Positions 1 to 34,686 of a stretch of DNA of 64,000 bases are shown here, in pieces (within the stretch, counting starts at the first letter, position 1; each line of letters begins with the position of its first letter). The stretch covers positions 11,966,001 through 12,030,000 of the forward strand of contig OZ059897.1 of NCBI GenBank assembly GCA_964057225.1. Reading direction: 5' to 3'. Below the pieces are notes generated by a model. That model worked only from the letters and a program-made list of their open reading frames with translations, was not told the DNA's origin and did no database searches. The DNA is from Auanema rhodensis (lineage: Eukaryota; Animalia; Nematoda). The position numbers and the translations under genes are program-made.

Positions 1-468
1 CATTTGATTCTCATTCGAAAGTATCTGCATAGAGGATAATTAAAAATCTAATTAATTCTTTTAAAATTATATGCAAAGAATAATAACAGAGCATAAAGAG
101 AAAAAGTAACAAAAATTGTCAACATACCGTAACTAATTTTTGCTCAACTCCATTGTGGACTTCACACACAACGAAGAACATCCCTTCAACCAAATAATAT
201 AGAAGCTCAAGCTTTACCACGTTCCATCCTTTTTCAAATAATTTAGCCATGTTTTAATAGTGTTTTACTTGAGTACGAATAATAAATTTTTAAATACTGC
301 CTCATTTAATGAATGATGTTATTAACCAATTTAAACAACAAAATCTATTAAATTTATATAAGAAGTATTATAACAGTCCAGAATCGTTTATGTAAATTCT
401 TGTTAAATCTATAGTTTGCATTATATTTTTGAATTTTATAATTAAATCAATTTCAGCGTTTTAATTAT

Positions 469-2424: not shown

Positions 2425-2763
2425 CAAGAGATTTTATAATTTAAATATAAGATTTTCAATAATGATTGTGTACTATAGTAGTATAGAATGTAGAATAGCA
2501 TGTATTCTAAGTGGTAGTAATAGGAATAAAGTCTTAATTATCTAAAGACGACTTGAATACGATAACGTATAATTGTCGTACAAGTACTACAATTGAAAAA
2601 AAAATTGGTTATTCAAAATTGAATTCAAAGAATTGTTGCTGAAAAGGAAAATTTGTTAGTGAAAAAAATATTTATAAAACATTATCTATAAACAATAAAC
2701 TATGAATTGTCCTGAGCATGCGTTTAATGCGTATATACATACATAGATATATGATGAATATCA

Positions 2764-5152: not shown

Positions 5153-5362
5153 AGCATCAAACTTACAAATGTACTGATTTTCTTGCGCCTTTTGTTTTTT
5201 GTTGAAAAGAGAGAGTAATTAACCCAGAAAAACTTCATGCGGTATGAAGTAATATGAACCCCTTTTCGTATATATCCCAGACTGTTGATATCTCAATAAA
5301 ATGTACTTAATATACGATATATCCAATAATCTTACTTGACAAGTTTAGGCAATATTTCTATG

Positions 5363-5529
5363 AGGTCAGAAAACCGTTATAATAACCAGTATATCCAGGA
5401 AAATAGCTACTAATTTATACGAAAATTATTTTATTCCTTTTTTTTGTAATTTTGATAAATAAACTGAGCAAGAAAATGCAACCAATTCACTTGTTTCGAA
5501 AAGTAAAATGATAACATTGCGCATGACCT
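5363..5529. promoter_or_regulatory. Candidate nuclear-receptor half-sites upstream of mlt-10 copy A
   Basis: AGGTCA at 5363-5368 and TGACCT at 5524-5529 lie within 400 bp of the ATG. NHR-23 (ROR-type, binds AGGTCA) regulates mlt-10 in C. elegans. Hexamers are short, so support is weak. Confidence 0.35.
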
Positions 5530-5927
5530 CTTCACGTGCTTGGAGCAAATCTTTTGAAAATTTGAAAAGAAAAAATAATATTTATCGATCTTGAGGACAT
5601 AATAAGGAATGTTTATTGAGTTTACATATTAGTATGTGAATTTATAATTGTAACATGTTATTGAGAAAATCTGGTTTTTTTTAAATATTATTGATGTTGT
5701 GCTTCACTCTTTTCTTCTTCTAGTTGTTCATCAAGATTAAAATGAAAGGTGAAAAAACTAAAGATTGTAAGAACAAACGTTTAATAAACAAATGACGATA
5801 AGATTATCTTTATCCCAAAATGAGAGAAACAATAAAAAAATGAATACGTAGTAGACCAAAATGATTAAGACAAATATATAGATTAGTAGTTTAATTATTT
5901 ACAGAAATAAATTTATTATCATGATTG

Positions 5928-6356
5928 TCTTACGGTAGGTCCGAGAACTGAAAAACCGTAAACGGGTGAGAACATATATGGAGAGAGTACAGTTGGATTG
6001 AGAACTGAGATCCATCTTTTAGATCTTCGGGCTACTTCATTCTATGAACGAGAAAATTTGAAACAAAAATTCCTATGATTTGGCTTACTGTGGAGTTTCT
6101 TGCAATCAAACGAACTCTATCCCAAAGACCATTTTCTCTTTGTTCAGTTGTTTGATTACGGTATGTATCAAGATTAAATCCATTATCATCATCCAATTTC
6201 ATACCTTAAGCAATAACAAAGTTGAAAATTTAGGTTTCACAAGTAAAAGCTTGTTTAACCTTGTTTTGAATATAAATCTTCAATTTGATTTGTTTCTAAG
6301 AAAGTAAATCCACGATTTTTCATATCTGTATGTTGTAAACCATTGAATGACTAAAA
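5928..6356 (-). pseudogene. Duplicated three-exon fragment of mlt-10 copy B
   Basis: Matches 8018-8446 (offset 2090), including two introns; the only mismatch seen is 6030 G vs 8120 T (synonymous Ala). No intact upstream exons or terminal repeat exon. Confidence 0.85.
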
Positions 6357-6596
6357 TATGAATCTTATCCTTAACTCATTACAGGTAGTTATTCAAATAA
6401 CTTTAAAATTATAAAATTACAGTTCTTATTCTTAATTAATTTGAGAAAAATATATCATTTTGATCTTCTTTTAATGTTGATGTTCTTTGTCTTCTTATTC
6501 TGATATGCTTAACGGACCTTATGCAACACACATCCTTTCTTCTTTAATATCTATGACGTACGTATAACGAATTCAAAAGTTCAAATAACGTGAAAA

Positions 6597-7055
6597 TTAA
6601 AATTTTGAACTGGAATCCAAAATTTTGATGGGGAAGAATCGTAGAAGAAACCGAAGTTTATTCTGTTTGATTTGAATATTAAGAATGAACTTATTGTTTC
6701 AAGAAATGTGATGATATATGTATGTGAAACGTAATATCTCTGATCAAAGAACTGAGCTATAACACAAGCAAAGACTGTCCAATCAAAAGGATCCAATTCA
6801 TTACCGTATTTATCAAATAAAGTTATTATAAGCCTATACCATAATGCAAAATATGTTGAAAATTACATTTGCATATCTACAAATTCTTTACGAACAAGTA
6901 TTTTGGATTGTTTTAGTTTGCGATTGAGTGTTGGAATTTCGTAAAGTATCAAAGATTCAAAAATTTTTCTTTAATTCAAACGGGGCATGTACACAAGTGT
7001 TGAATGTGGAAGGTTTACTGTACATGGCTGTTCGTATGTGTTATAGCCTTCAGAA
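6597..7055 (-). CDS. Tentative unassigned small gene or pseudogene, 5' end not found
   Basis: Four putative exons joined by GT-AG introns (6969-7018, 6834-6866, 6663-6730) stay in frame: ..HVQKIFESLILYEIPTLNRKLKQSKILVRKEFVDMQMLIITLFDKYGNELDPFDWTVFACVIAQFFDQRYYNKLRFLLRFFPIKILDSSSKF*. One intron is only 33 nt; no recognisable family. Confidence 0.3.
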
Positions 7056-7618
7056 ACTTTTCACATATAACCAATTAATTTCTAAATGATTATTTCATAT
7101 TGTTTTAAAAAATTGAAAAACTTAATCTATATTTCATTTAAACTTGTATTATCAACCAGTGTTATCACATACAAAGGTGATTTGTGTTGACATAAATAAG
7201 ATTTCGGCGAACTTTAAAGATTGAACGGTGTGCCATGGTTCATTTATGAATTCATACTTATTTGTAACTAATCTATATGTATATATTATAATAACTAGAA
7301 AACTTCAAACTTAAGTTTTATTATAAAAATTTTTATGAAATTCTAGTATTAAATACATTTTTTACTTTTTGTATATTAATGTATATATTTATATTTAAAA
7401 TATAGTATAACATATATCAACTGTATAAAAGACTTACACGCATAATATTGGGATATTGCATGAGACCTATCTCAAAGATAGTTAAAAACAGAACAAATAA
7501 AACAAATTAATAGATTAGATTACAATATTATATATGTATAATTATTAAATAAGTTTCTTCTTATTATTATAGCTCAAAAAATTATTAATTTTCGATAATT
7601 AAGGTGAAAGCTGATCAA

Positions 7619-10600
7619 TTAAGAAAGAACGGTAGGAGAAAGAACTGATGCCATAAGAACTGATTTTGATAGAACTGATGGTGAACCTACTCCAGGTGAG
7701 AGAATTGCACCTCCGAGGACCATAGGAGATAAAACATCAGGGCATAGCACTGTTGGTGAAAGAACAAGAGGAGATAGAACATAAGGATTAATAACATTGG
7801 GAGATAATACATATGGAGTTAAGATAAACGGAGCAAAAACCAAAGGTGAAATAACATAAGGAGAAAGTAAATAAGGTGATAAGATGAAAGGCATTCCTAC
7901 GGCTGGAGATAGAACATATGGTGAAAGAACTGAAGGATTCAGAATGAGAGGAGAGAATAAAGATGGTGAGAGTACCTGGAAAACATTTCTACATTATATT
8001 ATGAAACAATATTATAATCTTACGGTAGGTCCGAGAACTGAAAAACCGTAAACGGGTGAGAACATATATGGAGAGAGTACAGTTGGATTGAGAACTGAGA
8101 TCCATCTTTTAGATCTTCGTGCTACTTCATTCTATGAACGAGAAAATTTGAAACAAAAATTCCTATGATTTGGCTTACTGTGGAGTTTCTTGCAATCAAA
8201 CGAACTCTATCCCAAAGACCATTTTCTCTTTGTTCAGTTGTTTGATTACGGTATGTATCAAGATTAAATCCATTATCATCATCCAATTTCATACCTTAAG
8301 CAATAACAAAGTTGAAAATTTAGGTTTCACAAGTAAAAGCTTGTTTAACCTTGTTTTGAATATAAATCTTCAATTTGATTTGTTTCTAAGAAAGTAAATC
8401 CACGATTTTTCATATCTGTATGTTGTAAACCATTGAATGACTAAAACATCAATCTTATTTTTAATTCTAGTTCAAACTTATTCCCACCTTTTCTAATTCC
8501 TTAAAGTTTTTTTCAATTCGTTGAGTTACTTCTAGTAATTCTCCTTCCAATCCGAAAAAGTTCATGTTTTTAAGTACTTTTAGAGCATCATCAATTGTTT
8601 CTCTAGCTCCAGACAGGTCCATTACGAGATCAAGAACCAAGTCTCTGTCTTTTCCTTGAAGACCAGTGACTTCCAACAGCTGAATATTGAAATTGTACTT
8701 TTTATTTGAAAAACTATATGAATTTGGCTTTCAATGATATAATAGATGGTGATAAACTTTCGTTTTTATAATTATGATATGAAAAATGTTGCAAAGTGTG
8801 AACCATCTAATGAAGTTCAACACCATTTATCTTGAAATAAGGTTGCGGCGAACACATAATAGATAGAATCTATCTCATTTGGTAATAGTCAAAGAAAAGG
8901 TTGGCTAAAAGTGAGAGAAAATATCTGTATCTAAACTACTCCCACAACTTTTTGTTCGAACGATCAGTCTTTTAACCTTTACATCTTTTTGTCTTTTGAT
9001 GTATTATATAATACGGTTTTGCTCTTTTATAAACTGTAAACTCAACATTTCACAATTTCTAATGAATTAATACCTTAGGGATTGGGAGAATTTGATTTTC
9101 AGTATCATCATTATAAAATGGTAGAATAGATGGTGATAAACTTCCTTTGATTTCTGATTTATCTGGCATAACTGATGCGAAACGTGGGCTAAAATTCGAT
9201 ATTTTTAGTTTCCTTTTTATATTTCTGTATCATCACTCACCTCAAGAACTTGATGTTTGCATTTTTCTTGAAACTTCCTTTAGAGTTTTCAATAGTTCCT
9301 ATCAATTCATAAGCTTCTCGTACAAGTGGGGGTAAAAATTGCTAAAACATTATATATTGTTTATAGGCTGAATATTTGGAGAAATTCTTCTTTTTTTTTT
9401 TTCAAATATTTGATATCTTATAATCACATTTTGATCGCATTCAATAAATTGTAATGGAAAGTGAAAATTCCTATCAACTGAGCTCAAAAATGTGATTGAA
9501 ATCTCATGAAATAAGAAAAAATACATATAAGTTATTTGAATTTTTTTGTTTAAAAAAAAACATTCGAAACTGGGGCTGAAAGCCGTTATCTATCATATCC
9601 AAGAGATCAACTAATCAAACGTCCAGACAGTTGATGTGATGATGACAGTTGTGATTTTCATTTTCAAGTTTAAATATGGATAAGGTGGATGGAGAAGAAA
9701 ATGAGATATGGAAGAGATCATGCATATGCATGTAGATTTAATAGACAATTATACACAAAAACCTTTAAAAATTTTTGAAAAAGGTCAAGAAAACTAATAG
9801 GTTGCTACCTTAGTATCCTGCATTTGTGATGGTTCTTCATTTCCTAAAACCAAATCAAGCATTCTCATATCATAGATTTTTGCTCCTTTTTCCTTGGCTC
9901 GAACATCCATAGCTTTTTTAACATCTAAAAGATTTTTATAGCTGTCGGTCCATTTCTTTCTGTAAAAAGATCGAGATTTTTAAGAAACATCAAGTGTATT
10001 TGCCTTTTCTCTTCGTTCTCTTTCTTTTGAATTAATACACGTATCATGTTTACGACCTTTTCAATGACGCTTCGATCAGCTGATTTCATGTTCGGGACTT
10101 TCTCTGTTTTTTTGACCTAAAGCAATGAATGGCTTTTAAAGACATAAGAAAGGGGGAACTTACAAAGAAACCTTCAACTCCATCACTCTTGCTCACAACA
10201 TCAGTAATCAAACGATATGGACTTCTACGTACTCTTCTGCTTCTATATTCCCAGAATTTGGTTTTTCTGACTGGCGTATGATTCAAATTTCCTTGTTGCT
10301 CCAATTTCTGATAATGATGAATTTAAAATAGTAAATTAGATAATGAACTACCTTAAGTAGCTTCTTGAGTTTTTGAATTTTTGATTTCGTTGATACTTTT
10401 TTAATTTTATGCATTATTAGAGGTTTTCTTTTATACTGAACGGATTCATTTTTTTTGTTTTCAACAGTATTTCTGAAACAAATGAAACGTTATGAAACAT
10501 TAAATTAGATAATATATAACTTACTTTTCCATAATAAATGAAATATTTTTAGTTTTATTATCTTCTTTAATTTCAGTTTTAACTTGTTTAGTTCTGAAAA

Positions 10601-11088
10601 TATTAAAAGAAATAACAATTTGAAACTTTAGTTTAAAAAACCTTTTAATGGGTTGAGAATCAAGTATATCTTTAGCATCAACTATACATTGAGCTGAGGT
10701 TACTATATCTCTATTATCTTTTATTTTATTTAAACATTTATACAATTTTCTTCTATCATCTGAAATATAAACATATGATGTTATTGAGGACTAAACAATG
10801 CAACTTCGCTCTAATTGATCATAAACATCTTTTCCTAATTGGCCAATAATAGCTTTAATTGAATGAAGATACCAATTATAGTGCACAGTTTTCACTCTAT
10901 CAAAACCTTTTTCATCTAAACGTATTTTTTCTATAACTTCCGCTTTCTTTTCATAACTATTTAATGTATCTGAATTGCATAAACCTGAAAAAGAACAAGC
11001 ATTTGATTAACTTTCAAACTTAATAGAAATGAAACTCACCATAATGAACAAGGAAAAGAAGAAGAAACCAACTCTGTCTGAGCATCAT
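7619..11088 (-). CDS. MLT-10-family moulting/cuticle protein (copy B)
   Basis: Signal peptide MMLRQSWFLLLFLVHYG; VHYNWYLHSIKAIIGQLG; SPRFASVMP..GSLSPSILPFY; RRVRR and RRSKR sites; terminal VLSP repeats ending VLSPTVLS. One GC-AG intron at 9960-10003. Confidence 0.93.
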
Positions 11089-12365
11089 TCCGAGTTTTGT
11101 CCTAGTTACAGTATAACCTACAGTACACTCAGACTTGAAGTTTGCAAACTATAGAAACAAACTGAAACGAAGAGGTTATCTGAGATTCTGAAAAATGAAG
11201 CAACGCCTTCAGACTTCTAGATTCGTTTATATAACTTTGAGAAAATTATCCAGCAGGGTAAATTACAGAAATTTAAAAAAAAAAAACAAAAAAAGTTGAG
11301 AGAATAGTTGTTAGGCCATAAAGTCAGATATGATATCACAGAAGCATTGAAGATGAACTACGATGATACCAAGACGTAATTGATACAAAAGAGAACAAAA
11401 TTCTATCTTTGCCCTAAGATAAGAATGAAATTCATGGAGAAAATCCAAGATGAAAGATGAGATGATCAACCTCTTTCTCGTACCCCCACCACCTATCTCT
11501 CTTCTCTTTGAATCCTTCCTTCCTTTCTTTTGTTCTCTTTCTGTAGAGCACTTGTATCAATCGTATTACAGACCAAAGGTTTATAGAAACATTAAGAAAA
11601 TACAAGAAGAAATAGATAAGACGTCACTTAATGTACTCTAATCCGAAATATTTCAAAATGTCAAGACTAACTTTTTGGTCTTTGAAATCTGAGGGAATCA
11701 TATAAAAGTCCATGATTTAAAAAAACCTTTGCGACCTATTTTTCATGATACTTGATAATCATCCTGCATAAGTTCAAAATGTGCCGGCTCCGAAATTATC
11801 GTTTCCTGCAATAAATCAAAAAAAAAAGATAAATTGACAAGAACTTCAATGCATACTTGTTCCACAACTTTATTAAGGTTGGAACTCTAAAAAGGTGTCA
11901 TACAAATTTCATAACGTTTGAAACTGCATTCAAAACCGTGAAAAACTACTTATGACCTTCAATGTACAGACGAGTACACTAGTAATATGGTATCCGCCTT
12001 ATAATTCATTATGTTATTATTTCAATGCTCATTGCTTCATTGCACATTACTTTTTCACTTTTGCATTACTGTAAATCATCAAGTAATTATTAAATAAAAA
12101 TCATTCCGATCATTCTTTAATCCAATTTTATATATAAAAATATCTTTACGATATAGTTAATAATTTTAAAAAATTTATATTATAATATTTAAAATTTACA
12201 TACGTACTTTTGCGAATATACATTTATTAATAAGCTCATATTATTAATTTATATAATATTTGCATGAAAGGCGTTTTCAAAAACATTTAAACAATTTATA
12301 ATAAGAATCTTATTCATTTTTTGTATGTGTATTTGATATCACTATATTATAGATTCAATAGAAAG

Positions 12366-13875
12366 ATGATGTTTGATAGCTCAGACGAAGAAGAAGCAGC
12401 TCTTTTTCTAATAGAAACTGAAAAAAAACCTAAATTAGTGAAAAACCAATATTTCTCTGTAGGAAACAATGACGAAGAAACATGTAACAAAGAGAATGCT
12501 CAAACATCTGGTATTGAGGTATAAACTGTCTAGTATGCATTTCTAGAATTCCTCACAGAACAAAACGTTTGTGTTTGACTCCTGTGGCTACAGCCAAGCG
12601 TTTCAATTTTCTGAAAACACCCGTCCGTTTACAGTCAAACAAGGTGTCAATTATTATAATAAATAGAACAAGCATAATTATTTTTAGACTGTTTTGTATC
12701 TCAGTCAGATTTAGAAAAGACCCTTGCTGAGCAAAAAGTCAGATTCAGCTTTTTTTTTTGCTTTTATTACCTTGGGCTCAACTTCAGAGTGGTTTCTATA
12801 GCTCACATGATTTTGATCCTTTTTCACTGAAATCTGATGGCAGTAAACTGATTCTATATGAAATATGCAACTTCATCTTTGAGATTAACCAGAAGTTTTT
12901 TAAAATTGAAAAAAATCTTATATCTTTGAGGTTATTATTATATTGAGTTTTCAAATATTAATCTCCCATTGTAGGCATCAAGTCTTCGGAGCAAACTGTT
13001 CTCCTCAATTAAAAGTTGGATTTTGTTTTCTTTGCATAAAATCTTGATTTATAGGATTCTAATATTCTCAGTTTTGTAATAGAGAAACTTGAAAAAACTG
13101 TACTTTCCATCAAGAATATTCTGGAATCTATTGAACTACTCATTGATGTGGTGAAGGTAGTTATTACTTGAATTCATATGTTAGATCTAACTACATTATA
13201 TAGAATGAAAAAAGTGAAGAAGAAATTTCAGTAGTCTTGGATAAGCTTGATTTGATCCCGGTAAGAATTCATTTTGAAACTTTTGTTTTATATTCGCTTG
13301 TAGTCTACGTTGGAATTAATGAATGAGGAATGCATTTGGGATACTTCGTACACGTCGAAATCTAAGTTGAACTTGTGTTATAACTTAGAAAACACTTTTG
13401 TTTCAGTTTGGGCTACGAGTTTTCTATGGAAATAAGTTCAACAATCATGCTCTTCAACTCTATTCGGAATACATTCTTGAGTAAAATTGTTAAATATATG
13501 TAAGATTTTAGTATGCTCAACATCCTTACCAAGTTTAACTATATAGTGATAAATTGAAATATCTTCAAACATCTGATTTATATCATCAGAATCTCAATTC
13601 TGTAAGTCTTTTCTTGCTAATCATACTAACTTTTAACTATTAGCAGTGCAGAGAAATCAAAAAAAGCATTGACAGATCAGTATTCCTTTTGAACACAAGT
13701 ATGAGGAGAATGGAAAAAGAAGTGAATACACTGATTGAGACTTTACACGTAAGCAAATTTGTTCGAAACCTTCTAGATTTCACTTTAGAAACGTAAAGAA
13801 GCATTAGGTATATTACCAACCGTATTCAAAAAACCGTATGAATTGCTATTAAAATTGAAAAATTTGTTCTACTAA
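12366..13875 (+). CDS. Multi-exon gene of unknown family with acidic N-terminus and helical C-terminal half
   Basis: About a dozen exons with canonical GT-AG introns splice in frame from MMFDSSDEEEAALFLIE to ..KKPYELLLKLKNLFY* (TAA 13873-13875). No family recognised. Confidence 0.75.
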
Positions 13876-24868: not shown

Positions 24869-26832
24869 GCGTTAGTGTACATAAGTAATTTCTTTTCAAT
24901 TGATTGGACGAATAACTCTCTTAGATTAGGCTTCTTTTATCTTTAGTCCGGCTTCATATGATATAATCCTTTCGAATAAGGTAATTCATATAATTAAAAG
25001 ACCAGAGAAATATATATGTTCGAAATGACATAAGAAGCAAACGTAATGAAAACAGGATTTCTGGTGATTTTCTGGTCATGATGTGATGCGTTCATCATCG
25101 TAATTTCTTAAATCTAGAAAATGTATTTTCTAGAAAAATATATAACTCACTTTTCAATTCGTTATACATATATCAGTACTCAATATTTTACGTTCTCTTA
25201 CAAATGTATATCTCCCTTCCAATTTGCTTGTTGTGCCATTCTCTTTCTCAGCAAGTTGTTGTATTTGATTAGACCGTTCGGTTAAGTAAATATTGAGTAG
25301 AAACATAATGATAGAAAATAGTATCGATTGTTACTGACTTCTGGTCAGAGTATTATCTCAACCATACTGTCTTTTATGTTTCAATGGGGTTGAAATGGTT
25401 TAACAAAAAAAATATTCAATTCGCAAGTATTAATATCTTTTTACAGTTTCAAATGTGTCATAGTGTCGTAGTATGGTCAAGAAGTCCAGAAATGTCCAAC
25501 CAAGTTCATTCTTCTTTTAAAATTAGAAAACTTCGCTTTGCTATTAAGCCGATTGGAAGAAATAGAGGGGCAATTCTAGATAACTTGGATGAAAGAACTT
25601 GAGGACTTGTGATAGAGGGACGCGTCGTCGTTTAAGACGAAACAAAACAGGTTTTAGGCTTGATTTTCTGTTAAATTATGTAGTTTCTTTTATTGCAATA
25701 TTTCCAATATTCGCCTTCATTGAAATTTCTGGGAATATAGCTTAAGAGTCAATTCGTAAATTACAAACTATGACCAATTAAACTGTACTAATGAAAACTG
25801 ATAATGATAAATCAAGCTCCAAGTAGTAAGTAACAATAATTGGAATGATAAGAGAAAGATAAAATCATAGTCATTCTTAGTTTCCAAGAAATACCAAAAA
25901 TCAAGGGTCATTAGCAAAAGGAGTCATAGTTCCATATCATTTGATATCATAGTTAATGCTTAACAGCACAAAATGTTAGAAAAGGACGGAGTTTGCAGTG
26001 AACTTAGGTTCATGATTTTCAAATTAAAATTAAGAATAAGATTTGACATGAACGAACCTGAATGCCAACTCAATATAATAACAACTGCATGATGATACCA
26101 ATGAAGAAAAATGACTTTCTTCTTGCGAAGAATTAAGAATAAGGTATCTCCGAACTCAGCAATTTTGGAGAAACTGAAGAGGCAAGCCCAAAAAGCAGCA
26201 GGTGCTCGTGGATCGACAGAGAAACAAATAGAATCCGTAAAAGGTCTAAATCATAAGGATATATTATTATGAATCACCGAACGATTGAATGTTGAACAAT
26301 AATATATTTGTTTGTAAATAATGAATAAATATAAAAACTTCAAACAGATATAATTGACTATTCAAGAATTCTTTACCTAGTAGTTAATATATTCACAAAT
26401 TCTATTCCGAATCGCCATGTACCCATTATACTGAATACAGCTAAGAAGCCATTCCATGCTAACAATAACCGTCGCATACTGAAAAAGGACAAACACATTA
26501 ACGGAAATGGATAATATTTAAATAGAAGAAGCCTAACAAATGTTTTTCTTTAATTGGGCATATGATAGCATGTAAATAAATATTCTGAGAAAATAGTATT
26601 ACCTGTATGGTTTACGAGATTCCATAAATTTTTGAAGCAAATTAACAATACCAACATAAGCCACCGCAAGCCATATGGATGCACTCCAATGCTTAGCGAA
26701 GAATGTATGTACAGCTACATCATCCCATATCTTCTCAGGACCAAATGCTTCGTACTTATAAGGTGCATAAAGAATGCTAACTCCATTTCCGGTCCATACA
26801 GCATGGTTTCCTTTGTCAACTGCAGCCGACAT
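24256..26832 (-). CDS. elo-9: Fatty acid elongase (ELO/GNS1-SUR4 family)
   Basis: SKIAEFGDTLFLILRKK, FLHWYHH histidine box, MNYFVHSIMYSYY, TALQTAQM. N-terminus (NHAVWTGN, HWSASIW, MGTWRFG) recalls C. elegans ELO-9. One intron of about 1.3 kb (about 24750-26057). Confidence 0.88.
24794..24866. repeat. (AT)n microsatellite in the elo-9 intron
   Basis: Uninterrupted AT dinucleotide run of about 36 units. Confidence 0.97.
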
Positions 26833-29318
26833 AACTTACCTGAAGAAGATATTTCTCTATATTTATACATTTATGGGCACAAACATCAACGTTAAAACAA
26901 GAAACACTTGGCGAATAACGGTAGAGTCATCAAACGAATTTAGATTCACCGAATGATAAAGAAACATAGTCATTATCAAATGATGCACAATAGAAAAAAA
27001 TGATGAAAAGGAAAAGAAACAAAGTGCGGAAAGCTAAGAGAGCTATCTTTAAATATCATTCCTGCATATACAGTTGATAACTGTGCCATCTACTTACACA
27101 TAGGGGTGCGGGTTTTTTCGTGCTGTGTGTAGTGGTTAGCACACCAGCACAGTGGCTCTAGTTGGTCTCTTGTCCTATCGTTTCGTGGGGCCCACCCACC
27201 CTCTTGTCACCCCTATACCCCACCTACCTCTTTCTCTCATACACACAGATATAGACACAGATGTATTGAGCAGAAACGGGACCGATACAAAGAGAGAGAA
27301 AGATGAGAAGAAATAAAGAGAAAAGTGGGGGAGGAAGGTAGACAAGAAAGAGAAAGAGAGGGAAAGGGAGAGAGATAGGGGTATAGAGAGAAAACGAAAT
27401 AAAGCGAAAGAGAAACGAACGAACCGACCATCCCAATCAGCAGCTGAAGCACCGCCTCCTATGGACACCTATGCTAATATCGATTCTAGAAAAAGAGAAA
27501 AGCGCTAGTTTTTGTTAATTTTTTTAAATTCACGTGAAAACTATTTAAACCGTATAAGTCTTTTCAATATATGCTAAATATTTAATTTTTTTTGATATTT
27601 TATTAAAATATTGATTAGGCTCATTATAACTGCATACACCTAATATGTATGGATACTGTCTCATTCAATGAATTGAAACGGAAGCAATTGTAGACAACCA
27701 GGACGATTATATCAATGGTTTTTTGAGTTACTGTACACAACCACTTATCACTATCACTACCAACTGTATCTAATATTGAACCCCATACTAAAAATACTAA
27801 ATTTAAAAAAGATTCTACGATTGATTAAAGAACTTTATAAACTTTAACCCTTGGATGTTTCATGTAATTTAATTCGACTAGTTCTATCCCTTTCTAAAAG
27901 ATATTCTAGGGACTGATACGACCAGAAATGTTTTTGTCTGTTTAAATGTTTAAGTTCCAATGTTCAAGAGTTCTCTTGTAGCCAGGGGAGTTTCACGAAT
28001 TGAATTATGATCAACCTTGTCAAAGGGATGACATCTCAATGTTAAACAACAATATTCTAGCTTGAAACTTGATCGACAAGGTATTGCTGATCTTCAAACA
28101 CTATTGCCTAATCACGACAATAGTCTAGTATGTGAAAAATTGTCGATTATATTACAAAACTTTTAGAAAACAGACATTAAGATGAATCGTAAACACAGAT
28201 AGAATAAAAAAGATTGAGAAGATTGTATTATATTTTTAAAATTTTAGAAACGTCTCTAGAAGATTTCTACTGGTTTTGAGTTAATGACTGTAACTTTCCT
28301 AATGTTACAACTTTGCAACTTAGATTCCGGTCTCAACAAACCGTTATTAGAAACTGAACGTTATGACAGCACAAAAAGATAAGACGATCGGATGGATTCA
28401 ATAAAGAAAAAAAAATATTATTATTGAAAGGGATCATACTCTTAGCTATCATAGAGATACTGATTATAGATTAAAATACGGATGTGGTTTAAATTAAAAT
28501 ACGGATTTCCCTCATCCGTCGGAACTGAGAAATTATAGTTAAAAGCCATTATCAACAACTTATTTTGTTATATACGAACTCATATCAACAGATATGTTAC
28601 AAAACGTGTAGATGAATTGAACATTTTATATTCGATTAATTTACAATGACTGATATGGAAAGTATACCGTTATATCTGCACCTATAAATGTGAAGATAGA
28701 AATTATAACTACAAACGATAAAAACCTTTTTTTAACAATGTAACAAAGTTATACTACTAAACTGTTGCGATGTTGCAGCATAATTTTTATTACGATTTGA
28801 TAATTAAATGTTGATAATTGAAAATATATGCCTATGTCTGAACGTTAATCAGAACGAAATGACTGCAAGTACTTCTGAGGTATTCTAGTTTGGAAAGCAG
28901 GCCCACTTTATCCATACAATCCATGTTTAAATCAATGATTCACAGAATGTATTCCCGACAGAAAACGAACTCTATTTTTTTAAGCAGTAGCGCTGTTCGG
29001 TTGTCCTGACGTTTGTATCTAGGATATTTTTCTAAATGACTAATAATACACTACGAACTCTAAAAATAGCATTATTCTTTAGGCTTCATTACCTTTTTTT
29101 CCCATGATCTTGGACATTTCTGTGCCTTATTATTTATTTCGTTCAAATAGCTTGATCATATCAATGGTGCACTTCATGTGTAGTTTATATATTTTCAATT
29201 CAACGGCTGTAATATCAAAAATTCAGCTGAATAAGCAGTTCTTTCAATTTATTTTTTTAATTATGTTTGATGCTTATACTAGGCAATTTTTGAATTTATT
29301 CCGATTTTTCATTTTTTG

Positions 29319-32257
29319 ATGTCCAAAAACGATGAACTCTACTATGAAGTCGCTGAAGTTCTAAGGAAAGTTTCGGAAAAAGAAAAAAGTCTTCAAAATG
29401 CAGTTTACGCCAGTTACTATAAGGTTTGTTTTTTTAATTTGATAGAAACATAAACTTATTTTTATATTTCTTTTTGTATATCCTTGATTCTTGTTCTTTC
29501 TCGTGTTATTTTGTTTCTTTCAATTACATCTTAAACGGTAAAAGGTTCAAGGTTTAATGGAGGGAGAAAACGACGATATTAATCCCAAATGTAACCCCTT
29601 TGGTACCCGTTATCTTGAAGACGAGGCTAAAGTATGGGAACATAATGCATGGGATAATGTGGAATGGAGTGAGGAAATGGAAGAGCAAGCAAAGCAGATT
29701 ATCGAACGCCAAAAGGTGGAAAAAGTTCATGATGATCGTGCTTCGGAGTTGTTATCGTGTCCTGCTCAACAATGGGACTCCTTCTATCAGCAACATGCTG
29801 ACAATTTTTTCAAAGACCGAAATTGGCTTTTGAAAGAATTTCAAGAACTGGACATGCAATATCACAAAGGAGTTAGTTGCAAGCCTCTTTCTTACAGTAA
29901 ATCCAGTCGAGTTTTCCAGGAAACTCCTGTGCGAGTACTTGAAGTTGGATGCGGCGTGGGTAATACCACATTTCCGTTAAAAGACTGGGATTATGATAAG
30001 AAGATGTTCCTGTATAGTTGCGATTATTCTCAAGTTGCCGTTGATGTCTTGAAAAAGCAGGAAAAGTACGATCCCAATTCTATGCTATGTTTCCAGTGGG
30101 ATATTACTCAACCTCCAGTTCCTGAAGCTCCAAAAGCGGGGTCTCTCGATTTCGTTGTTTGTGTTTATGTATTATCTGCTATTCATCCCTCTAAAATTAA
30201 TGACGCTGTAAAACACCTTGTATCTCTCTTAAAACCTGGAGGAATGTTGATGCTTAAAGATTATGGTCGCTTTGATTTAACCCAGCTTAGGTTTAAGAAG
30301 GATAGATATATTGAAGAAAATCTATATTGTCGTGGTGATGGGACTTTGGTTTATTTTTTTGATCAAAATGAGTTGGACCAACTATTATGTAATGCTGGTT
30401 TAACCAAAATTATGAATATCGTTGATAAGAGATTAATTGTTAACAGAGCAAAGCAAGTTAAAATGTACAGGCAGTGGCTACAACTGAAGTATGTGAAACC
30501 TGTATGAGGTTATCTCTTGTTATTTGTTGTTATGTTGCCTTGTTGTTTTATAATTTGAAAACTATTAAAAATTTAACGAAAATTCCTTTTGTTTTATTAA
30601 GAATTTCAGAACAAGAAGACTTTGTTAAAGGTAGCATGTGAAACATTGAAGTTCCAGTCCGTTTTCGATGAAATCATCAAGGTATGATTGGATCTAGGGT
30701 TTGAGTAGTTTTCTGACGATAATTATTTGCTTAGAATCCATCTTTAAAAGTTATTCGAGTTGATCCGATGGTTAAAGGAAACCGCTTTTTACTTTATGCC
30801 TTATTGTATGATTACTTAGCAGGATCAGGATTAAATAGGGTTTTTCTAGCATCAATATAATATATTTAAAAAAATTTTTTCAAGGTTTCTCCTAAATTGA
30901 GATCTCTAATAATGACACATGGAAAGGAAATTAAAGATCAGGTATTTCATTCATATTTTTATTGCAATGTAAAGAAGGATTAAGGAAAAATTATTAGCTG
31001 AGGAAGGTAAAGGTATTTCTGCTATTCGAGATGCTGAAAAGAACAAAAAGGTATTTTTTCCTTTTTAAGGCGTTTTAAATTTTTATTTTTTAGAAAATTA
31101 AAATTCCAAGATATGCTCGTATTAATACTATAAAATGGAGCAAAGATGATGCTTTAAAATCGTTGACTGATGAAAATTGGAAGGTTTAGTGTTTCGATTT
31201 ATTTCTCTATTGTTGTTATTTAGGTATTAGAATTAGAAGAAGGAGATGATTTAGCGAAATGCATTGATGAACAAAAAGATGATGAAGTCATCCTTGATCC
31301 ACATGTTGAAAATTTGCTTTTATTTCCATTTATTGCTGATTTTCATACATATTGGATGGTTACAGATAGATATTTAATATTACAAGATAAAGTATGTTTA
31401 AGTTCTATTACCAAGTTCATATTATCAAACCTAGGCTTCTTGTTTACCTGCTTTTCTGCTTAATCCTGAAAAGGGATCCGACGTTTTTGATACATGTGCT
31501 GCTCCAGGAAATAAGACCAGTCATGCTGCAGCAATTATGGGCAATGAAGGGTACGATATATTATTAAAAATTGTCTATAAATATTATTTCAGAAACATTT
31601 TTGCCATGGATCGTGATAAAGAGAGAGTTGAAGTTATGAATAAATTGTTGGAACAATCGGGCGTCAAATGCGCTCAAGTGACGAATGGTGATTTCCTTCG
31701 TATAGATGTCAATAATAAAAAATATGCAGACGTAATTATATTTCTTACTGCATAGAAAACATTTTTTGAATTTTAGGTTAAATTTGCTATTGTTGACCCA
31801 CCCTGCTCTGGTTCAGGAATAGTCAAGAGATTAGATGAACTAACAGGTGGTAGAAATGATGAAGATCGATTACAAAAATTAAGAAATCTCCAGGTAAATT
31901 AGAAGTTTTTTAATTTGATTTTTTAATTTTTTAATATTGAAGAGTATGATTCTTAAACATGCTATGAAATTTCCAAATTTGAATAGAGTAGTGTACTCGA
32001 CATGTTCTCTACATGAAGAAGAAAATGAACAAGTTGTTGAAGAGGTAACATATGCTTCATTGTATTCTTTAAAGTTTTAATTTAAGGTCTTGAATGATAC
32101 ATATGTACGGGAACACTTCCGTATTTGCGATAACCTTTTACCGAGTTGGAAATCTCGCGGACATTCCAAATATGAAGATGGACCATTCTGTCTTAGAGCT
32201 AATCCTGAAGTAACACGTACGAATGGATTTTTCGTTGCCATGTTTGAAAGAAAATAG
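29319..32257 (+). CDS. nsun-5: Large-subunit rRNA m5C methyltransferase NSUN5
   Basis: Exon 1 (29319-29423) [35 protein letters not shown] joins exon 2 (from 30610) [15 protein letters not shown]. Then [60 protein letters not shown]. Intron 1 (29424-30609) contains another gene. Confidence 0.93.
29557..30507 (+). CDS. metl-2: METTL2-type tRNA N3-methylcytidine methyltransferase, nested in nsun-5 intron 1
   Basis: [19 protein letters not shown] (METTL2-type N-terminus), [70 protein letters not shown]. One probable stop-free 48-nt intron at 29872-29919. Confidence 0.93.
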   Translation: MEGENDDINPKCNPFGTRYLEDEAKVWEHNAWDNVEWSEEMEEQAKQIIERQKVEKVHDDRASELLSCPAQQWDSFYQQHADNFFKDRNWLLKEFQELDMQYHKGVSCKPLSYSKSSRVFQETPVRVLEVGCGVGNTTFPLKDWDYDKKMFLYSCDYSQVAVDVLKKQEKYDPNSMLCFQWDITQPPVPEAPKAGSLDFVVCVYVLSAIHPSKINDAVKHLVSLLKPGGMLMLKDYGRFDLTQLRFKKDRYIEENLYCRGDGTLVYFFDQNELDQLLCNAGLTKIMNIVDKRLIVNRAKQVKMYRQWLQLKYVKPV

Positions 32258-32610
32258 GTTTTTAAATTGTTAAGTTTCCATTGTTTCTGTTATTGTTATT
32301 GATTAAAATTGTTTGGCTCCCTTTACATTCTTCTGTTTTAATTGTCGTTTTCAATGACTTCAATGATTGCCCTCTTTGACCGTATCATATTAAAACTTCT
32401 AAGAGTATACTACTCAAAAAGGGTTAAAGGAAGGAAATAATTCTGACTATATATAGATGAACGTTATGAGGAAGTTGAAAAAAATCTTTTCGTAGCTCAG
32501 AAAGGGTTTTCTTTGTCTGAAAGGAAATTTCGTTCTTCGAAATAGTTTTAACCGAAAATAAAGTTAAACAAGTTTGTGACTCCAAATACTTCAACGATTT
32601 CCCAAGACCC

Positions 32611-32639
32611 GGGTAATTGAGTGTGCTTTTCAATTACCC
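32611..32639. promoter_or_regulatory. Perfect inverted repeat with two TAATTG homeodomain cores upstream of nmr-1
   Basis: GGGTAATTGA-(9 nt)-TCAATTACCC, about 170 bp upstream of the nmr-1 ATG. Confidence 0.4.
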
Positions 32640-32811
32640 TGCTTAGACGAGAAGTTAGCTCATTGCCTCATCGTATGAAGCTATTCAACCTGACTAGTGG
32701 TTGTGCATCTTCTAAGCCTTCTTCTTAGCAATCCAATCATCTAAAACACGTAAGGACAGCCATCATTTTTCTTTTACTTGATGTTCTACAGCTAACAAAC
32801 GCCTAAATTCA

Positions 32812-34686
32812 ATGTATTTTATATTATATCTATTACTAATATTCCTATCTGTTATAATAAATGCTTCAAATGTATTTAAAATTTCTGTTTTAATTTTTGC
32901 TGAGGGTCATTTTGAAGATACTGTGGATTCAGTAAAAGTAATTACTTTTATTTAAATAAATTTAATGAAAAAATACTTTTAGAGTTCATATGAAGAAATA
33001 TTTCAATCAGCTAATTATACAATTGGAACTTATTCAATTATGCCTGAATATGTAGATGGTGGTACATTAAATCATAGAAGGTATATTATATATAAAATAT
33101 TTAAAAAATAATAATTATTGAAGAAGTAGAAATCGTCTTGATTTAACAAATGAAGTGGTATGCCATAAACTTCTTAATAACTCTTTAGCCACAGTTATAT
33201 ATGCTTCATCCTTAAGAAGGTTTATAAAATTGCCAGAATATGTTTAAACTTTAAAATAATTTATTCAGAGAATCACATGAATTATACTTATCATTAGCAA
33301 AATCAACATCGTATGCTTTAGCTTTTTATCAACTTCCTGCTATTGGTGTGATGGTGAGAGAAGCCGAATTTAGTAAAAAGGTTCAAAAAAAGTTCCTGAA
33401 TCAAAACTAAACAAGTTTATTTAGAGAGTTTATAAAACGTTTATACGATCATCTCCAGCATTTTCGGATGAATCATACGTGTTCATGCACTTATTAACTC
33501 GATTGAATTATAGACAGGCATTGAATTCGCTAAATTCATTCCAAATTAATCTGCAATTCTAGGTAGTTGTTGTTAGTGTACGTGGTGATCCTAATGGAAA
33601 TCAATTTGTTGAAATGTTTGAAGAAAAACGATTTAAATACAAAATTCATGTAAAAACATATTTAATACAAAAGAATAAAATAATATTTTATCTTTCAGGT
33701 ACAAAGATATGTTGAAATAGAGATTAATGATGCATTAAATGTTACAATCATGGATCAATTTGAAGAAGTTACTTCAAATATAATAATTCTTTATGCTAAG
33801 TATTACTATTTCCCTTTTTTTAATCATCAATACGTTTTTTTCTTTTAGTCTATTGGATGCTGAAGCAATTTTCGAAGCAGCGAACGAGCTGACTGGAGCC
33901 GGTCGCGTTTGGATTGTGAACGAGCAAGCTAGTAGAGCACGAAACGTTCCAAATGGTTTTCCAAATAAAAGAAATATATTATGTTTATGTTGTTCAGGAT
34001 CTTTGGCAAGTCGTTTATCTCAAAGTCCAGTCTCAGCACTACGGACATCTTTTGAAATTTTAAAGAATGGACTTGAATTTTTGAAAACATTAAATGAAAC
34101 AATCAAGCCTCCTACAAGCTGTAGACGAGAGCATGTTCACTCATCTTGGATAGAAACACATGGACCAATGTTCTATAAGTAAATATAAGTTATCAATTAT
34201 TATATTGGAATATTATTATTTTCAGAACAATCTGTAATACTTCTACTAATAAAATAGAATTTAATGATAAATGTGAGCGTATTAGTGTTAATTATGATAT
34301 TGTTAATTTCAATGAAGAATCAATAGATGTTGGCACATTGGTAATAATATTATTATTATTATTATTGATCATTGATTATATTATTAAAGCTTGGAAATCA
34401 TCTTCGTTTAAATGAGGATTTAATTCATTGGAACGGTGATAAGAAACCTTTGGAAATTTCATTACCAAAACATTTGCGAGCTGTTACAGTTAATGTGAGA
34501 AATTTATTTTATGAAAAATAAAAATATTTTTTTCAGGATCCTCCATTTGTTTATATTACTCCAACTATACATCTAAGTGAATGTAAAAATCTTGGAATTA
34601 TTCCTATTGCTTTAAGTGGAAAAGAAATGATTAATGTGGTAAAATATATTAAAATAAATAATAATAATAATATTATTTATATTATA

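What the first reader, a model, noticed from the sequence alone, without database searches (positions are those of the whole stretch)
29319..30680. tRNA m3C methyltransferase (METTL2) nested on the same strand inside intron 1 of the rRNA m5C methyltransferase nsun-5
Seen: NSUN5 exon 1 (29319-29423, 35 codons, donor AAG|gtttgt) continues in frame at 30610 (atttcag|AAC AAG AAG..). The 1186-nt intron between them holds the whole METTL2 ORF (29557-30507) in the same orientation. Its stop lies 102 nt before the NSUN5 exon-2 acceptor, with U/G-rich sequence and an ATTAAA near 30564. Established: nested genes are usually antisense; NSUN5 methylates large-subunit rRNA and METTL2 methylates C32 of tRNA anticodon loops. 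Inference: one pre-mRNA would yield either NSUN5 (intron excised) or METTL2 (3' cleavage inside the intron), a possible RNA-processing switch between two unrelated translation-modifying enzymes. From memory, the C. elegans orthologues and elo-9 are close neighbours, so the arrangement may be old; I cannot confirm this or its novelty.
Basis: partly seen in the sequence, partly recalled or inferred. Interest (0 to 1): 0.9.

Follow-up and report, generated by a model that had tools for sequence, protein, structure and literature searches.

The report
tRNA methylase gene inside NSUN5 intron
A complete gene for a tRNA-methylating enzyme (METTL2) sits, in the same direction, inside the first intron of the gene for a ribosomal-RNA-methylating enzyme (NSUN5); transcripts confirm this, and the layout is old and widespread in nematodes and belongs to a known kind of locus.

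Summary
Spliced RNA contigs from 3 of 4 public runs carry the predicted 29423^30610 junction. With ten further junctions it gives a clean 12-exon, 435-aa NSUN5 ORF. The 1186-nt intron 1 holds a METTL2-type tRNA m3C methyltransferase gene on the same strand. The correction: that gene has a 48-nt in-frame intron (29872-29919), so the protein is 300 aa, not 316.

The order exon 1 - METTL2 - exon 2 is seen at DNA level in Haemonchus, Ostertagia, Auanema, C. briggsae, Pristionchus and Strongyloides. Mesorhabditis and Toxocara have the tandem order METTL2 - exon 1 - rest. Many public nematode "fusion proteins" of 630-810 aa are probably chimeric gene models of this locus.

In C. elegans, one deletion, gk1068, is named for both Y53F4B.4 (nsun-5) and Y53F4B.42. 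No paper I found discusses the nesting.

Making NSUN5 requires reading through METTL2 and its 3'-end signals. That is shown. A regulated switch is not shown: a shared promoter, trans-splicing of METTL2 and its poly(A) site remain inferences.

The closest known loci are C. elegans unc-60 and cha-1/unc-17. This is a new member of a known kind, of moderate interest. The scan had not noted it on other DNA.

The parts
29319..29423 (+). NSUN5 exon 1 (ATG plus 35 codons, phase 0; donor AAG|GTTTGT)
   Evidence: Sequence. Spliced to 30610 in contigs of X2, X3 and X4. Homologous to NSUN5 N-termini from nematodes to vertebrates.
29424..30609 (+). NSUN5 intron 1, 1186 nt (GT..AG). The other ten NSUN5 introns are 40-53 nt.
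   Evidence: Joint; intron table.
29424..29556 (+). 133-nt ATG-free spacer between the exon 1 donor and the METTL2 ATG. It holds 3' splice-site-like AG dinucleotides at 29543-44 and 29550-51 (TTCAAG|GTTTAATG).
   Evidence: Sequence. The X4 METTL2 contig starts at 29550 and nothing in X4 covers 29424-29549. X1-X3 contigs run unbroken from 29394/29398 into METTL2. A 3' splice site lies 1-15 nt before the METTL2 ATG in Auanema, C. briggsae and S. ratti as well.
29557..29871 (+). METTL2 exon 1 (codons 1-105)
   Evidence: Carries the N-terminal FGTRYL...NAWDNVEW motif typical of METTL2 hits.
29872..29919 (+). METTL2 intron, 48 nt, in frame and stop-free.
   Evidence: GT..AG joint 29871->29920 in all four runs.
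29920..30507 (+). METTL2 exon 2 (codons 106-300 plus stop TGA 30505-30507)
   Evidence: Pfam Methyltransf_23/12/25/11. PDB METTL6 at 1.9e-45. Best named hits are METTL2.
30508..30609 (+). METTL2 3' region, which is also the 3' end of NSUN5 intron 1. U/GU-rich, ATTAAA at 30564-30569, acceptor AATTTCAG at 30602-30609.
   Evidence: Sequence. The X2 METTL2 contig ends at 30562 and the X1 contig reads through into exon 2. ATTAAA is also present after the stop in Auanema. The poly(A) site itself is not resolved.
30610..30681 (+). NSUN5 exon 2 (start of the Pfam NSUN5_N domain)
30735..32257 (+). NSUN5 exons 3-12: 30735-30839, 30885-30941, 30985-31050, 31094-31183, 31224-31391, 31435-31550, 31593-31731, 31777-31893, 31943-32044, 32087-32257 (stop included).
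   Evidence: All junctions are GT..AG in contigs of the four runs. They give a clean 435-aa ORF. Pfam NSUN5_fdxn-like and Methyltr_RsmB-F hit the exons. The DPPCSG and YSTCS motifs are present.

Best explanation
This is an ancient, conserved, same-strand nested gene pair in a rhabditid nematode. The closest relative found is Auanema sp. JU1783.

The host gene encodes NSUN5, the large-subunit rRNA m5C methyltransferase. It has 12 exons and encodes 435 aa. Its first coding exon (35 codons) is separated from exon 2 by a 1186-nt intron. That intron contains a complete two-exon gene for a METTL2-type tRNA m3C32 methyltransferase (300 aa), with its own ATG, stop and 3' region.

Shown:
- Exon 1 is spliced to exon 2. 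Transcription that starts upstream of exon 1 therefore runs through METTL2, and the exon 1 donor must skip two internal acceptors and METTL2's 3'-end signals.
- METTL2 is expressed as RNA that keeps its own stop codon. There is no fusion junction.

Inferred (about even odds):
- Both mRNAs come from one primary transcript.
- METTL2 mRNA is released by spliced-leader trans-splicing at the acceptor 5 nt before its ATG, plus cleavage and polyadenylation in the 102-nt tail.
- NSUN5 mRNA needs the long cis-splice, which discards METTL2.
- The two products would then be alternative fates of each pre-mRNA, as in C. elegans unc-60 and cha-1/unc-17.

Whether the ratio is regulated is unknown.
For: - Junction 29423^30610 in X2, X3 and X4, and all other introns, including the METTL2 intron, spliced.
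- Clean 435-aa and 300-aa ORFs.
- Family assignments.
- Exon 1 is the ancestral NSUN5 N-terminus.
- Order exon 1 - METTL2 - exon 2 by tblastn in Haemonchus and Ostertagia, Auanema, C. briggsae and S. ratti, and Pristionchus.
- Chimeric gene models with the order exon 1 + METTL2 + rest in C. angaria, Ancylostoma, Necator, Angiostrongylus and Aphelenchoides fujianensis.

For a shared transcript:
- Only 112-180 nt lie between the exon 1 donor and the METTL2 ATG in the five compact genomes.
- X1-X3 contigs are continuous from exon 1 (29394/29398, which is k-1 before the donor) into METTL2. X1 has one 2431-nt contig running through METTL2 and the tail into spliced NSUN5 exons.

For trans-splicing:
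- A 3' splice site lies 1-15 nt before the METTL2 ATG in four species.
- The X4 METTL2 contig starts at 29550. That is the acceptor minus the two letters (AG) that an SL1-type leader ending in GAG would share with the genome (the SL1 sequence is from my own knowledge).

For analogy:
- unc-60 has a variant PAS about 90 nt before the distal acceptor, and its exon 1 donor is preserved until that acceptor is transcribed.
- unc-17 lies in the first intron of cha-1 (PMC3875643).
Against: - All RNA evidence is from assembled contigs of one study. Contigs can join overlapping molecules, drop rare forms, and show neither true 5' or 3' ends nor abundance.
- No spliced-leader letters, poly(A) tails or loose ends were reported.
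- METTL2 contigs end at 30474, 30505 and 30562 in different runs, so the poly(A) site is unresolved.
- A compact promoter inside the 133-nt spacer cannot be excluded.
- By the established outron rule, an acceptor with a donor upstream is expected to be cis-spliced. No exon 1->29552 joint was seen, and what prevents it is unknown.
- The non-coding spacers are poorly conserved with Auanema. No long-range pairing beyond chance was found.
Confidence: 0.6

Rival explanations
1. Independent nested gene. METTL2 has its own promoter in the short spacer or in exon 1 DNA. The two genes interact only through passive read-through or transcriptional interference, and there is no processing choice on a common pre-mRNA.
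For: In run X4 the METTL2 contig begins at 29550, nothing covers 29424-29549, and the NSUN5 contig passes exon 1->exon 2 without a break. Internal promoters are common in nematode operons (established knowledge).
Against: Only 133 nt are available, and 112-180 nt in four other compact genomes. X1-X3 contigs are continuous from exon 1 into METTL2. Any polymerase that makes NSUN5 necessarily also transcribes METTL2 in sense.
Confidence: 0.3
2. A real bifunctional METTL2-NSUN5 fusion protein is made by splicing from a donor near the METTL2 C-terminus into NSUN5 exon 2. Many nematode genomes are annotated this way, including isoforms of the C. briggsae QX1410 and VX34 loci.
For: Models of 630-810 aa exist in more than 20 species and join METTL2 at about Q284 to NSUN5 exon 2 in frame. 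The window has CAA|GTTAAA at 30456/30457, in phase 0.
Against: No such joint is in any of the four runs, and the contigs keep the METTL2 stop codon. The GT is simply a conserved Val codon, and it is equally present in Acanthocheilonema and Bursaphelenchus, where the genes are unlinked. Models of this type lack NSUN5 exon 1, or in some species prepend it to METTL2, although exon 1 is conserved from vertebrates to nematodes. Separate METTL2-only proteins of 307-313 aa come from about 1.05-kb Logan contigs in the Caenorhabditis cluster.
Confidence: 0.05
3. Shared coding first exon. Exon 1 is also spliced to an acceptor just before METTL2. The AG at 29550-51 would instead give a 37-codon upstream ORF whose TAA overlaps the METTL2 ATG. 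Either way METTL2 would carry or depend on the NSUN5 N-terminus.
For: The acceptor at 29543-44 is in frame. TAATG overlap of the exon 1 frame with the METTL2 ATG occurs in both the window and Auanema. unc-60 and cha-1/unc-17 use a common first exon.
Against: No joint from 29423 to 29545 or 29552 is in any run. In C. briggsae and S. ratti the equivalent splice is out of frame, with a different geometry. AAAAG|G is a poor nematode acceptor.
Confidence: 0.04
4. Ordinary operon or misassembly. NSUN5 really starts at or after 30610 as a downstream operon gene, and the upstream 'exon 1' is a relic or an assembly artefact.
For: The 102-nt distance from the METTL2 stop to the exon 2 acceptor looks operon-like. 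Relatives with the tandem order exist: Mesorhabditis, Toxocara, and oxyurid models. ORFs lacking exon 1 are called on Logan contigs and on a C. briggsae isoform.
Against: The exon 1-exon 2 joint is in three runs. Exon 2 has no start codon. Exon 1 is conserved and lies upstream of METTL2 in six other genomes.
Confidence: 0.01

Closest known systems
C. elegans unc-60 locus (UNC-60A/UNC-60B; Ohno et al. 2012, reviewed in PMC3875643)
   Same: One transcription unit. The exon 1 donor must be kept until a distant acceptor is transcribed. The proximal unit ends with a variant poly(A) signal close upstream of the distal acceptor: about 90 nt in unc-60, and here ATTAAA 40 nt and the stop codon 102 nt before the acceptor. 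The two mRNAs are mutually exclusive products.
   Different: In unc-60 both products are paralogous ADF/cofilins and both use exon 1, which supplies only the start codon. Here the proteins are unrelated enzymes, exon 1 encodes 35 residues of NSUN5 only, and METTL2 has its own ATG and was not seen spliced to exon 1. The unc-60 regulators (ASD-2/SUP-12) and their elements are known; none is known here.
Cholinergic gene locus cha-1/unc-17 (VAChT inside the first intron of ChAT; PMC3875643)
   Same: A complete gene for an unrelated protein lies on the same strand within the first intron of another gene. The two products act in one pathway (acetylcholine there, translation-machinery RNA methylation here). 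The arrangement is evolutionarily old.
   Different: There the shared first exon is non-coding and is spliced to both genes. Here exon 1 is coding and was seen joined only to NSUN5.
Nematode SL2-type operon
   Same: Same-strand genes with about 100 nt between the upstream gene's 3' end and the downstream gene's acceptor. Relatives (Mesorhabditis, with 367 nt between the gene models; Toxocara; oxyurids) have the plain tandem order METTL2 -> NSUN5.
   Different: The downstream gene's acceptor is cis-spliced to an exon that lies upstream of the upstream gene, so it is not, or not only, an SL2 site. Spliced-leader use could not be tested here.
C. elegans Y53F4B.4 (nsun-5) / Y53F4B.42
   Same: Probably the orthologous pair. 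One deletion, gk1068, is named for both genes (PMC12258979). C. briggsae has the nested order. The ELO (elo-9-like) neighbour is conserved.
   Different: I could not fetch the C. elegans locus. That Y53F4B.42 is the METTL2 orthologue and lies in intron 1 is from memory and from the strain name only. No paper in the library discusses the arrangement.

Membership tests
METTL2/Trm140-type tRNA m3C32 methyltransferase | Class I SAM-dependent methyltransferase fold with the EVGCGVGN motif | tested here: met
   Pfam Methyltransf_23/12/25/11 at E 4e-17 to 5e-13. PDB METTL6 at 1.9e-45 over residues 56-315. [10 protein letters not shown] is present.
METTL2/Trm140-type tRNA m3C32 methyltransferase | Closer to METTL2 than to METTL6, with the N-terminal FGxRxL...NAWDxVxW extension | tested here: met
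   The best named non-nematode hits are all METTL2/METTL2A, at 286-314 bits over 95-100% of the query. METTL6 chains score 159 bits and lack the first 55 residues. No tree was built.
METTL2/Trm140-type tRNA m3C32 methyltransferase | m3C32 formation on tRNA-Thr/Arg(/Ser) | not testable with these tools
   Needs biochemistry or tRNA modification mapping.
NSUN5/Rcm1 large-subunit rRNA m5C methyltransferase | NSUN5_N, NSUN5 ferredoxin-like and RsmB/F methyltransferase domains, in that order | tested here: met
   Exon-wise Pfam hits: NSUN5_N in exon 2 (weak), NSUN5_fdxn-like in exons 6 and 7, Methyltr_RsmB-F in exons 8 and 11. The assembled protein is 56-62% identical over 399 residues to strongylid NSUN5 that carries all three domains.
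NSUN5/Rcm1 large-subunit rRNA m5C methyltransferase | Two catalytic cysteines (motif IV PC, motif VI TC) | tested here: met
   VDPPCSGSG and VYSTCSLH are in the transcript-supported ORF.
Complex locus of the unc-60 or cha-1/unc-17 kind (two mRNAs from one pre-mRNA by splice choice versus 3'-end choice) | The exon 1 donor is spliced across a complete proximal coding unit to a distal acceptor | tested here: met
   Joint 29423^30610 in three runs.
Complex locus of the unc-60 or cha-1/unc-17 kind (two mRNAs from one pre-mRNA by splice choice versus 3'-end choice) | The proximal unit has its own poly(A) site upstream of the distal acceptor | tested here: inconclusive
   ATTAAA at 30564, a U/GU-rich tail, and one contig ending at 30562. 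No poly(A)-tailed reads are available, and another contig reads through.
Complex locus of the unc-60 or cha-1/unc-17 kind (two mRNAs from one pre-mRNA by splice choice versus 3'-end choice) | A common first exon is spliced to both units | tested here: not met
   No exon 1->METTL2 joint in four runs. METTL2 has its own ATG. A common promoter remains possible through trans-splicing.
Complex locus of the unc-60 or cha-1/unc-17 kind (two mRNAs from one pre-mRNA by splice choice versus 3'-end choice) | Regulated (tissue- or condition-dependent) choice | not testable with these tools
   Only contigs of one study were available, and contig depth is not informative.
SL2-type operon | The downstream gene receives SL2 at an acceptor about 100 nt after the upstream gene's 3' end | tested here: inconclusive
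   The geometry fits, but the acceptor at 30609 is shown to be cis-spliced to exon 1. No spliced-leader sequence was recovered.

The most novel reading that the evidence does not exclude
The locus is a conserved processing competition, at least as old as the common ancestor of nematode clades IV and V. From one promoter it would reciprocally set the output of a tRNA anticodon-loop methyltransferase and a ribosomal RNA methyltransferase.

It would have arisen from an operon-like tandem pair (METTL2 -> NSUN5, still seen in Toxocara, oxyurids and Mesorhabditis) by relocation of NSUN5's first coding exon to the far side of METTL2.

A corollary: nsun-5 alleles or nuclear RNAi used in C. elegans lifespan and stress studies may also alter METTL2 (Y53F4B.42), and therefore tRNA m3C.
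Probability: 0.2. Interest if true: 0.65.

Novelty: new member of a known kind. Interest (0 to 1): 0.42.

Why it matters
1. Annotation. Dozens of public nematode proteomes, and the UniProt names derived from them, carry 630-810-aa "METTL2/METTL6-NSUN5" proteins. These are most likely chimeras of this nested pair. In Pristionchus mayeri the nested METTL2 is not annotated at all. The transcript-supported model here gives a template for correcting them.

2. Genetics. NSUN5 loss is reported to extend lifespan and change stress resistance in worms (PMC4317494; PMC7957426). If the C. elegans pair is built the same way, deletions such as gk1068, or nuclear RNAi against nsun-5 pre-mRNA, may also hit the tRNA m3C enzyme.

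3. Mechanism. It is a compact, deeply conserved natural case in which a 5' splice site must be held back across two competing acceptors and a 3'-end signal. It also has natural "revertants" in the tandem order, which makes it a convenient system for studying cis- versus trans-splicing and polyadenylation competition.

It is not a new principle.

Tried and rejected
- Long-range RNA pairing between the exon 1-METTL2 spacer and the exon 2 acceptor. A perfect 10-nt inverted repeat (29488-29497 / 30608-30617) looked promising, and CTTGTTCTT recurs in Auanema. But duplex energies against dinucleotide shuffles are at chance in all five species tested (fraction of shuffles at or below the observed energy 0.33-0.998). 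Rejected.
- A conserved fusion donor in METTL2. The GT after Q284 is a Val codon that is also conserved where the genes are unlinked. Rejected.
- Conserved non-coding elements in the two spacers. Window-versus-Auanema alignments show only exon conservation and general T/GT-richness.
- An Rfam family inside or beside the intron. None at gathering score in 26000-33500.
- My own hand-built exon 4/5 boundary had a phase error. The transcript joint placed exon 5 at 30985 and resolved it.
- Finding the C. elegans proteins directly. The clustered protein searches did not list them, so C. elegans rests on a strain name and on C. briggsae.
- The look-up of encoding contigs found nothing for two Steinernema proteins, so Steinernema's arrangement is unknown.
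- The 5' end of NSUN5 mRNA. The X4 contig starts at 29318, 1 nt before the ATG, and there is no AG acceptor there. Unexplained.
Full report
**1. What is in the sequence**

The window is about 30% G+C with 40-53-nt introns, which is nematode-like.

On the + strand an ATG at 29319 opens 35 codons that end at a donor, AAG|GTTTGT (29423/29424). At 30609/30610 an acceptor, AATTTCAG|AAC, continues in frame. The 1186 nt between them hold an open frame, 29557-30507, whose stop lies 102 nt before the acceptor. ATTAAA is at 30564-30569.

**2. Identity of the two genes**

The inner frame is a class I methyltransferase.
- Pfam Methyltransf_23/12/25/11 hit at E down to 4e-17.
- The best solved relatives are human METTL6 chains, at 1.9e-45, but they align only from residue 56.
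- In the large protein search all named non-nematode hits are METTL2/METTL2A, covering 95-100% of the query.
- The N-terminal FGTRYL...NAWDNVEW extension is present.
- I therefore call it a METTL2-type tRNA m3C32 methyltransferase. Activity is untested.

The outer gene is NSUN5.
- Pfam hits exon by exon: NSUN5_N on exon 2, NSUN5 ferredoxin-like on exons 6 and 7, RsmB/F methyltransferase on exons 8 and 11.
- The assembled protein has the motif IV and VI cysteines (DPPCSG, YSTCS).
- It is 56-62% identical to strongylid NSUN5 over 399 residues.
- Exon 1 lies N-terminal to the Pfam NSUN5_N model. It nevertheless aligns with the first 30-35 residues of NSUN5 from other nematodes, a coelacanth, a shrew, Saccoglossus, Lingula and Priapulus (LY..A......S....V....|N.K.L..L.CE). 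It is an ancestral part of the protein, not a fortuitous ORF.

**3. Transcript evidence**

They are recorded as 'RNA?'. Their Logan contigs are spliced throughout, so they are RNA.

Laid on 28900-32400, they show the following.

(a) The joint 29423^30610 (GT..AG, skipping 1186 nt) is in contigs of X2, X3 and X4.

(b) Ten further NSUN5 introns are spliced. With exon 1 they give a 1308-nt, 435-aa ORF without a stop.

(c) A 48-nt intron inside METTL2 (29872-29919) is spliced in all four runs. The real protein is 300 aa.

(d) No joint links exon 1 to either acceptor-like AG before the METTL2 ATG, to the METTL2 internal acceptor, or METTL2 to NSUN5 exon 2. The contigs keep the METTL2 stop codon.

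(e) In X1-X3 the METTL2 contig begins at 29394/29398. That is k-1 letters before the exon 1 donor, as expected when a graph branches there into 'spliced to exon 2' and 'continue into the intron'. X1 has a single 2431-nt contig that runs from exon 1 through the spacer, METTL2 (its intron removed) and the 102-nt tail, then into fully spliced NSUN5 exons.

(f) In X4 the NSUN5 contig passes exon 1->exon 2 unbroken. The METTL2 contig starts at 29550, and my back-calculation from the depth bins shows nothing laid on 29424-29549.

Contigs cannot prove single molecules, ends or abundance, so (e) and (f) are leads only.

**4. What follows firmly**

Exon 1 and exon 2 are joined in mRNA, so RNA polymerase starting upstream of exon 1 transcribes METTL2 in sense. 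The exon 1 donor must stay unused while two acceptors (29551 and 29919) and METTL2's 3'-end signals are transcribed.

Cleavage at the METTL2 poly(A) site, or trans-splicing at the METTL2 acceptor, on such a transcript would separate exon 1 from the rest of NSUN5. Conversely, the long cis-splice discards METTL2 in the lariat.

If METTL2 mRNA derives from the same promoter, the two mRNAs are alternative fates of each pre-mRNA.

**5. What is only inferred**

A shared promoter is suggested by two things. The spacer is tiny: 133 nt here, and 112-180 nt in Auanema, C. briggsae, S. ratti and Pristionchus. And contigs are continuous from exon 1 into METTL2.

Trans-splicing is suggested by a 3' splice site 1-15 nt upstream of the METTL2 ATG in four species. 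It is also suggested by the X4 contig starting at 29550. That is exactly the acceptor minus the two letters (AG) that an SL1-type leader ending in ...GAG would share with the genomic ...CAAG. The SL1 sequence is from my own knowledge.

No leader letters, poly(A) tails or loose ends were returned. METTL2 contigs end at 30474, 30505 and 30562, so the poly(A) site is unresolved. An independent promoter inside the spacer remains a serious rival, which I put at about 0.3.

If a transcript keeps exon 1 and the spacer, exon 1 opens a 45-codon upstream ORF. It is followed by an ATG-free 103 nt before the METTL2 ATG. Such RNAs would translate METTL2 poorly.

**6. Comparative evidence**

tblastn with the transcript-supported proteins gives the nested order, exon 1 - METTL2 - exon 2, in:
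- Haemonchus contortus, where NCBI already annotates METTL2 inside the NSUN5 gene range
- Ostertagia
- Auanema sp. JU1783, C. briggsae QX1410 and Strongyloides ratti
- Pristionchus mayeri, where METTL2 is unannotated

Chimeric gene models with the order exon 1 + METTL2 + rest add C. briggsae CBG20899, C. angaria, Ancylostoma ceylanicum, Necator, Angiostrongylus and Aphelenchoides fujianensis.

The tandem order, METTL2 - exon 1 - rest, is found by tblastn in Mesorhabditis belari and Toxocara canis. Gene models give it in M. spiculigera, Syphacia and Enterobius.

In Acanthocheilonema and Bursaphelenchus no NSUN5 lies within 8 kb of METTL2.

The linkage therefore predates the split of clades III-V. 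The nested state is present in clades IV and V. Tandem and nested states have interconverted at least once. A tandem duplication of [METTL2 + exon 1] followed by reciprocal loss would do this in either direction; that path is my inference.

An ELO gene upstream on the opposite strand is syntenic in the window, Auanema, C. briggsae and Pristionchus.

**7. The 'fusion proteins'**

Two protein searches returned more than 20 nematode models of 630-810 aa that carry both domain sets. They include isoforms of the C. briggsae QX1410 and VX34 loci.

They all join METTL2 near Q284 to NSUN5 exon 2. The 'donor' they use is the conserved Val codon GTN. That codon is equally present where the genes are unlinked.

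Models of this type lack NSUN5 exon 1; in a few species they prepend it to METTL2. In the window no such junction exists in the contigs.

I regard them as prediction chimeras caused by an exon 2 that has no start codon. A minor real fusion isoform cannot be excluded (0.05).

**8. Relation to what is known**

Kuroyanagi's review (PMC3875643) describes two C. elegans loci of this kind.
- unc-60 has a common exon 1, then exons 2A-5A ending in a variant PAS about 90 nt before the exon 2B acceptor. The exon 1 donor is 'preserved' by ASD-2/SUP-12.
- In cha-1/unc-17, unc-17 lies in cha-1's first intron behind a shared 5' exon.

The present locus shares the geometry and the logical competition. It differs in that exon 1 is coding, belongs to NSUN5 only, and is not seen spliced to METTL2.

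For C. elegans itself I found only the strain name 'Y53F4B.4&Y53F4B.42(gk1068)' (PMC12258979), and Y53F4B.42 listed among the ten mRNAs most enriched for FBF-1 (PMC4911911). That Y53F4B.42 is the METTL2 orthologue is from my memory.

No paper in the library discusses the nesting.

**9. Negative results**

See 'tried and rejected'. In brief:
- Spacer-acceptor pairing is at chance level.
- The spacers are not conserved beyond composition.
- No Rfam family is present.

**10. Verdict**

The nesting and the mandatory read-through are real and ancient. The 'switch' is a reasonable but untested model of a known type.

Its value lies mainly in three things: correcting widespread mis-annotation, a caveat for nsun-5 genetics, and a compact conserved model for donor preservation. 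Interest is moderate (0.42).

The scan had not noted this on other DNA. One other note on this window (s1-407199) proposes a shared coding exon, which the contigs do not support.

Noticed in passing
window 27109-27503: Non-coding blocks are strongly conserved with Auanema sp. JU1783 (L006 about 3800-4170), with long invariant runs such as GGGCCCACCCACCCTCTTGTC and GGACACCTATGCTAATATCGATTCTA. They lie between the ELO gene and NSUN5. No Rfam family fits. This could be an unknown ncRNA or a conserved enhancer or promoter.
   Followed up: partly
window 28900-29120 (- strand): A low-depth contig in run X4 carries a minus-strand intron (29032-29092, CT..AC on +). It ends about 200 nt upstream of the NSUN5 ATG. 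This is an unidentified divergent neighbour, so the NSUN5 promoter region is at most about 200 nt and possibly bidirectional.
   Followed up: no
window 26599-26832 (- strand): First exon of an ELO-family fatty-acid elongase (weak Pfam ELO hit). It is syntenic with ELO genes upstream of the METTL2/NSUN5 pair in Auanema, C. briggsae and Pristionchus.
   Followed up: partly
L010 5306-6320 (Pristionchus mayeri GCA_036245805.1): An intact-looking METTL2 coding region lies unannotated inside intron 1 of the annotated NSUN5 gene.
   Followed up: partly
public proteins P0005, P0121-P0124, P0127-P0133, P0135, P0137-P0140, P0143, P0157, P0158, P0160, P0161, P0168, P0169, P0179, P0182, P0243-P0245, P0248, P0257: These are METTL2+NSUN5 'fusion' gene models in many nematode genomes, some named METTL6 by UniProt. 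They are most likely annotation chimeras of the nested or tandem pair.
   Followed up: partly
window 29310-29321: The X4 NSUN5 contig starts at 29318, one base before the ATG. There is no AG acceptor there. The context TTTTTTGATG is conserved in Auanema. The true 5' end, or any spliced-leader site, of NSUN5 mRNA is unexplained.
   Followed up: no
window 30508-30560: The METTL2 3' region is rich in UGU-containing repeats, including UGUUUUAU, which fits the PUF/FBF motif UGUNNNAU as I recall it. The presumed C. elegans orthologue, Y53F4B.42, is listed among the ten mRNAs most enriched for FBF-1 (PMC4911911). This may be coincidence in U-rich sequence.
   Followed up: no
L003 (Mesorhabditis belari) 8001-12531; L009 (Toxocara canis) 1-11446: These relatives have the plain tandem order, METTL2 then a complete NSUN5 with exon 1 downstream of METTL2. 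The gap is 367 nt in Mesorhabditis and about 2.6 kb in Toxocara. The nested and tandem states have therefore interconverted during nematode evolution.
   Followed up: partly
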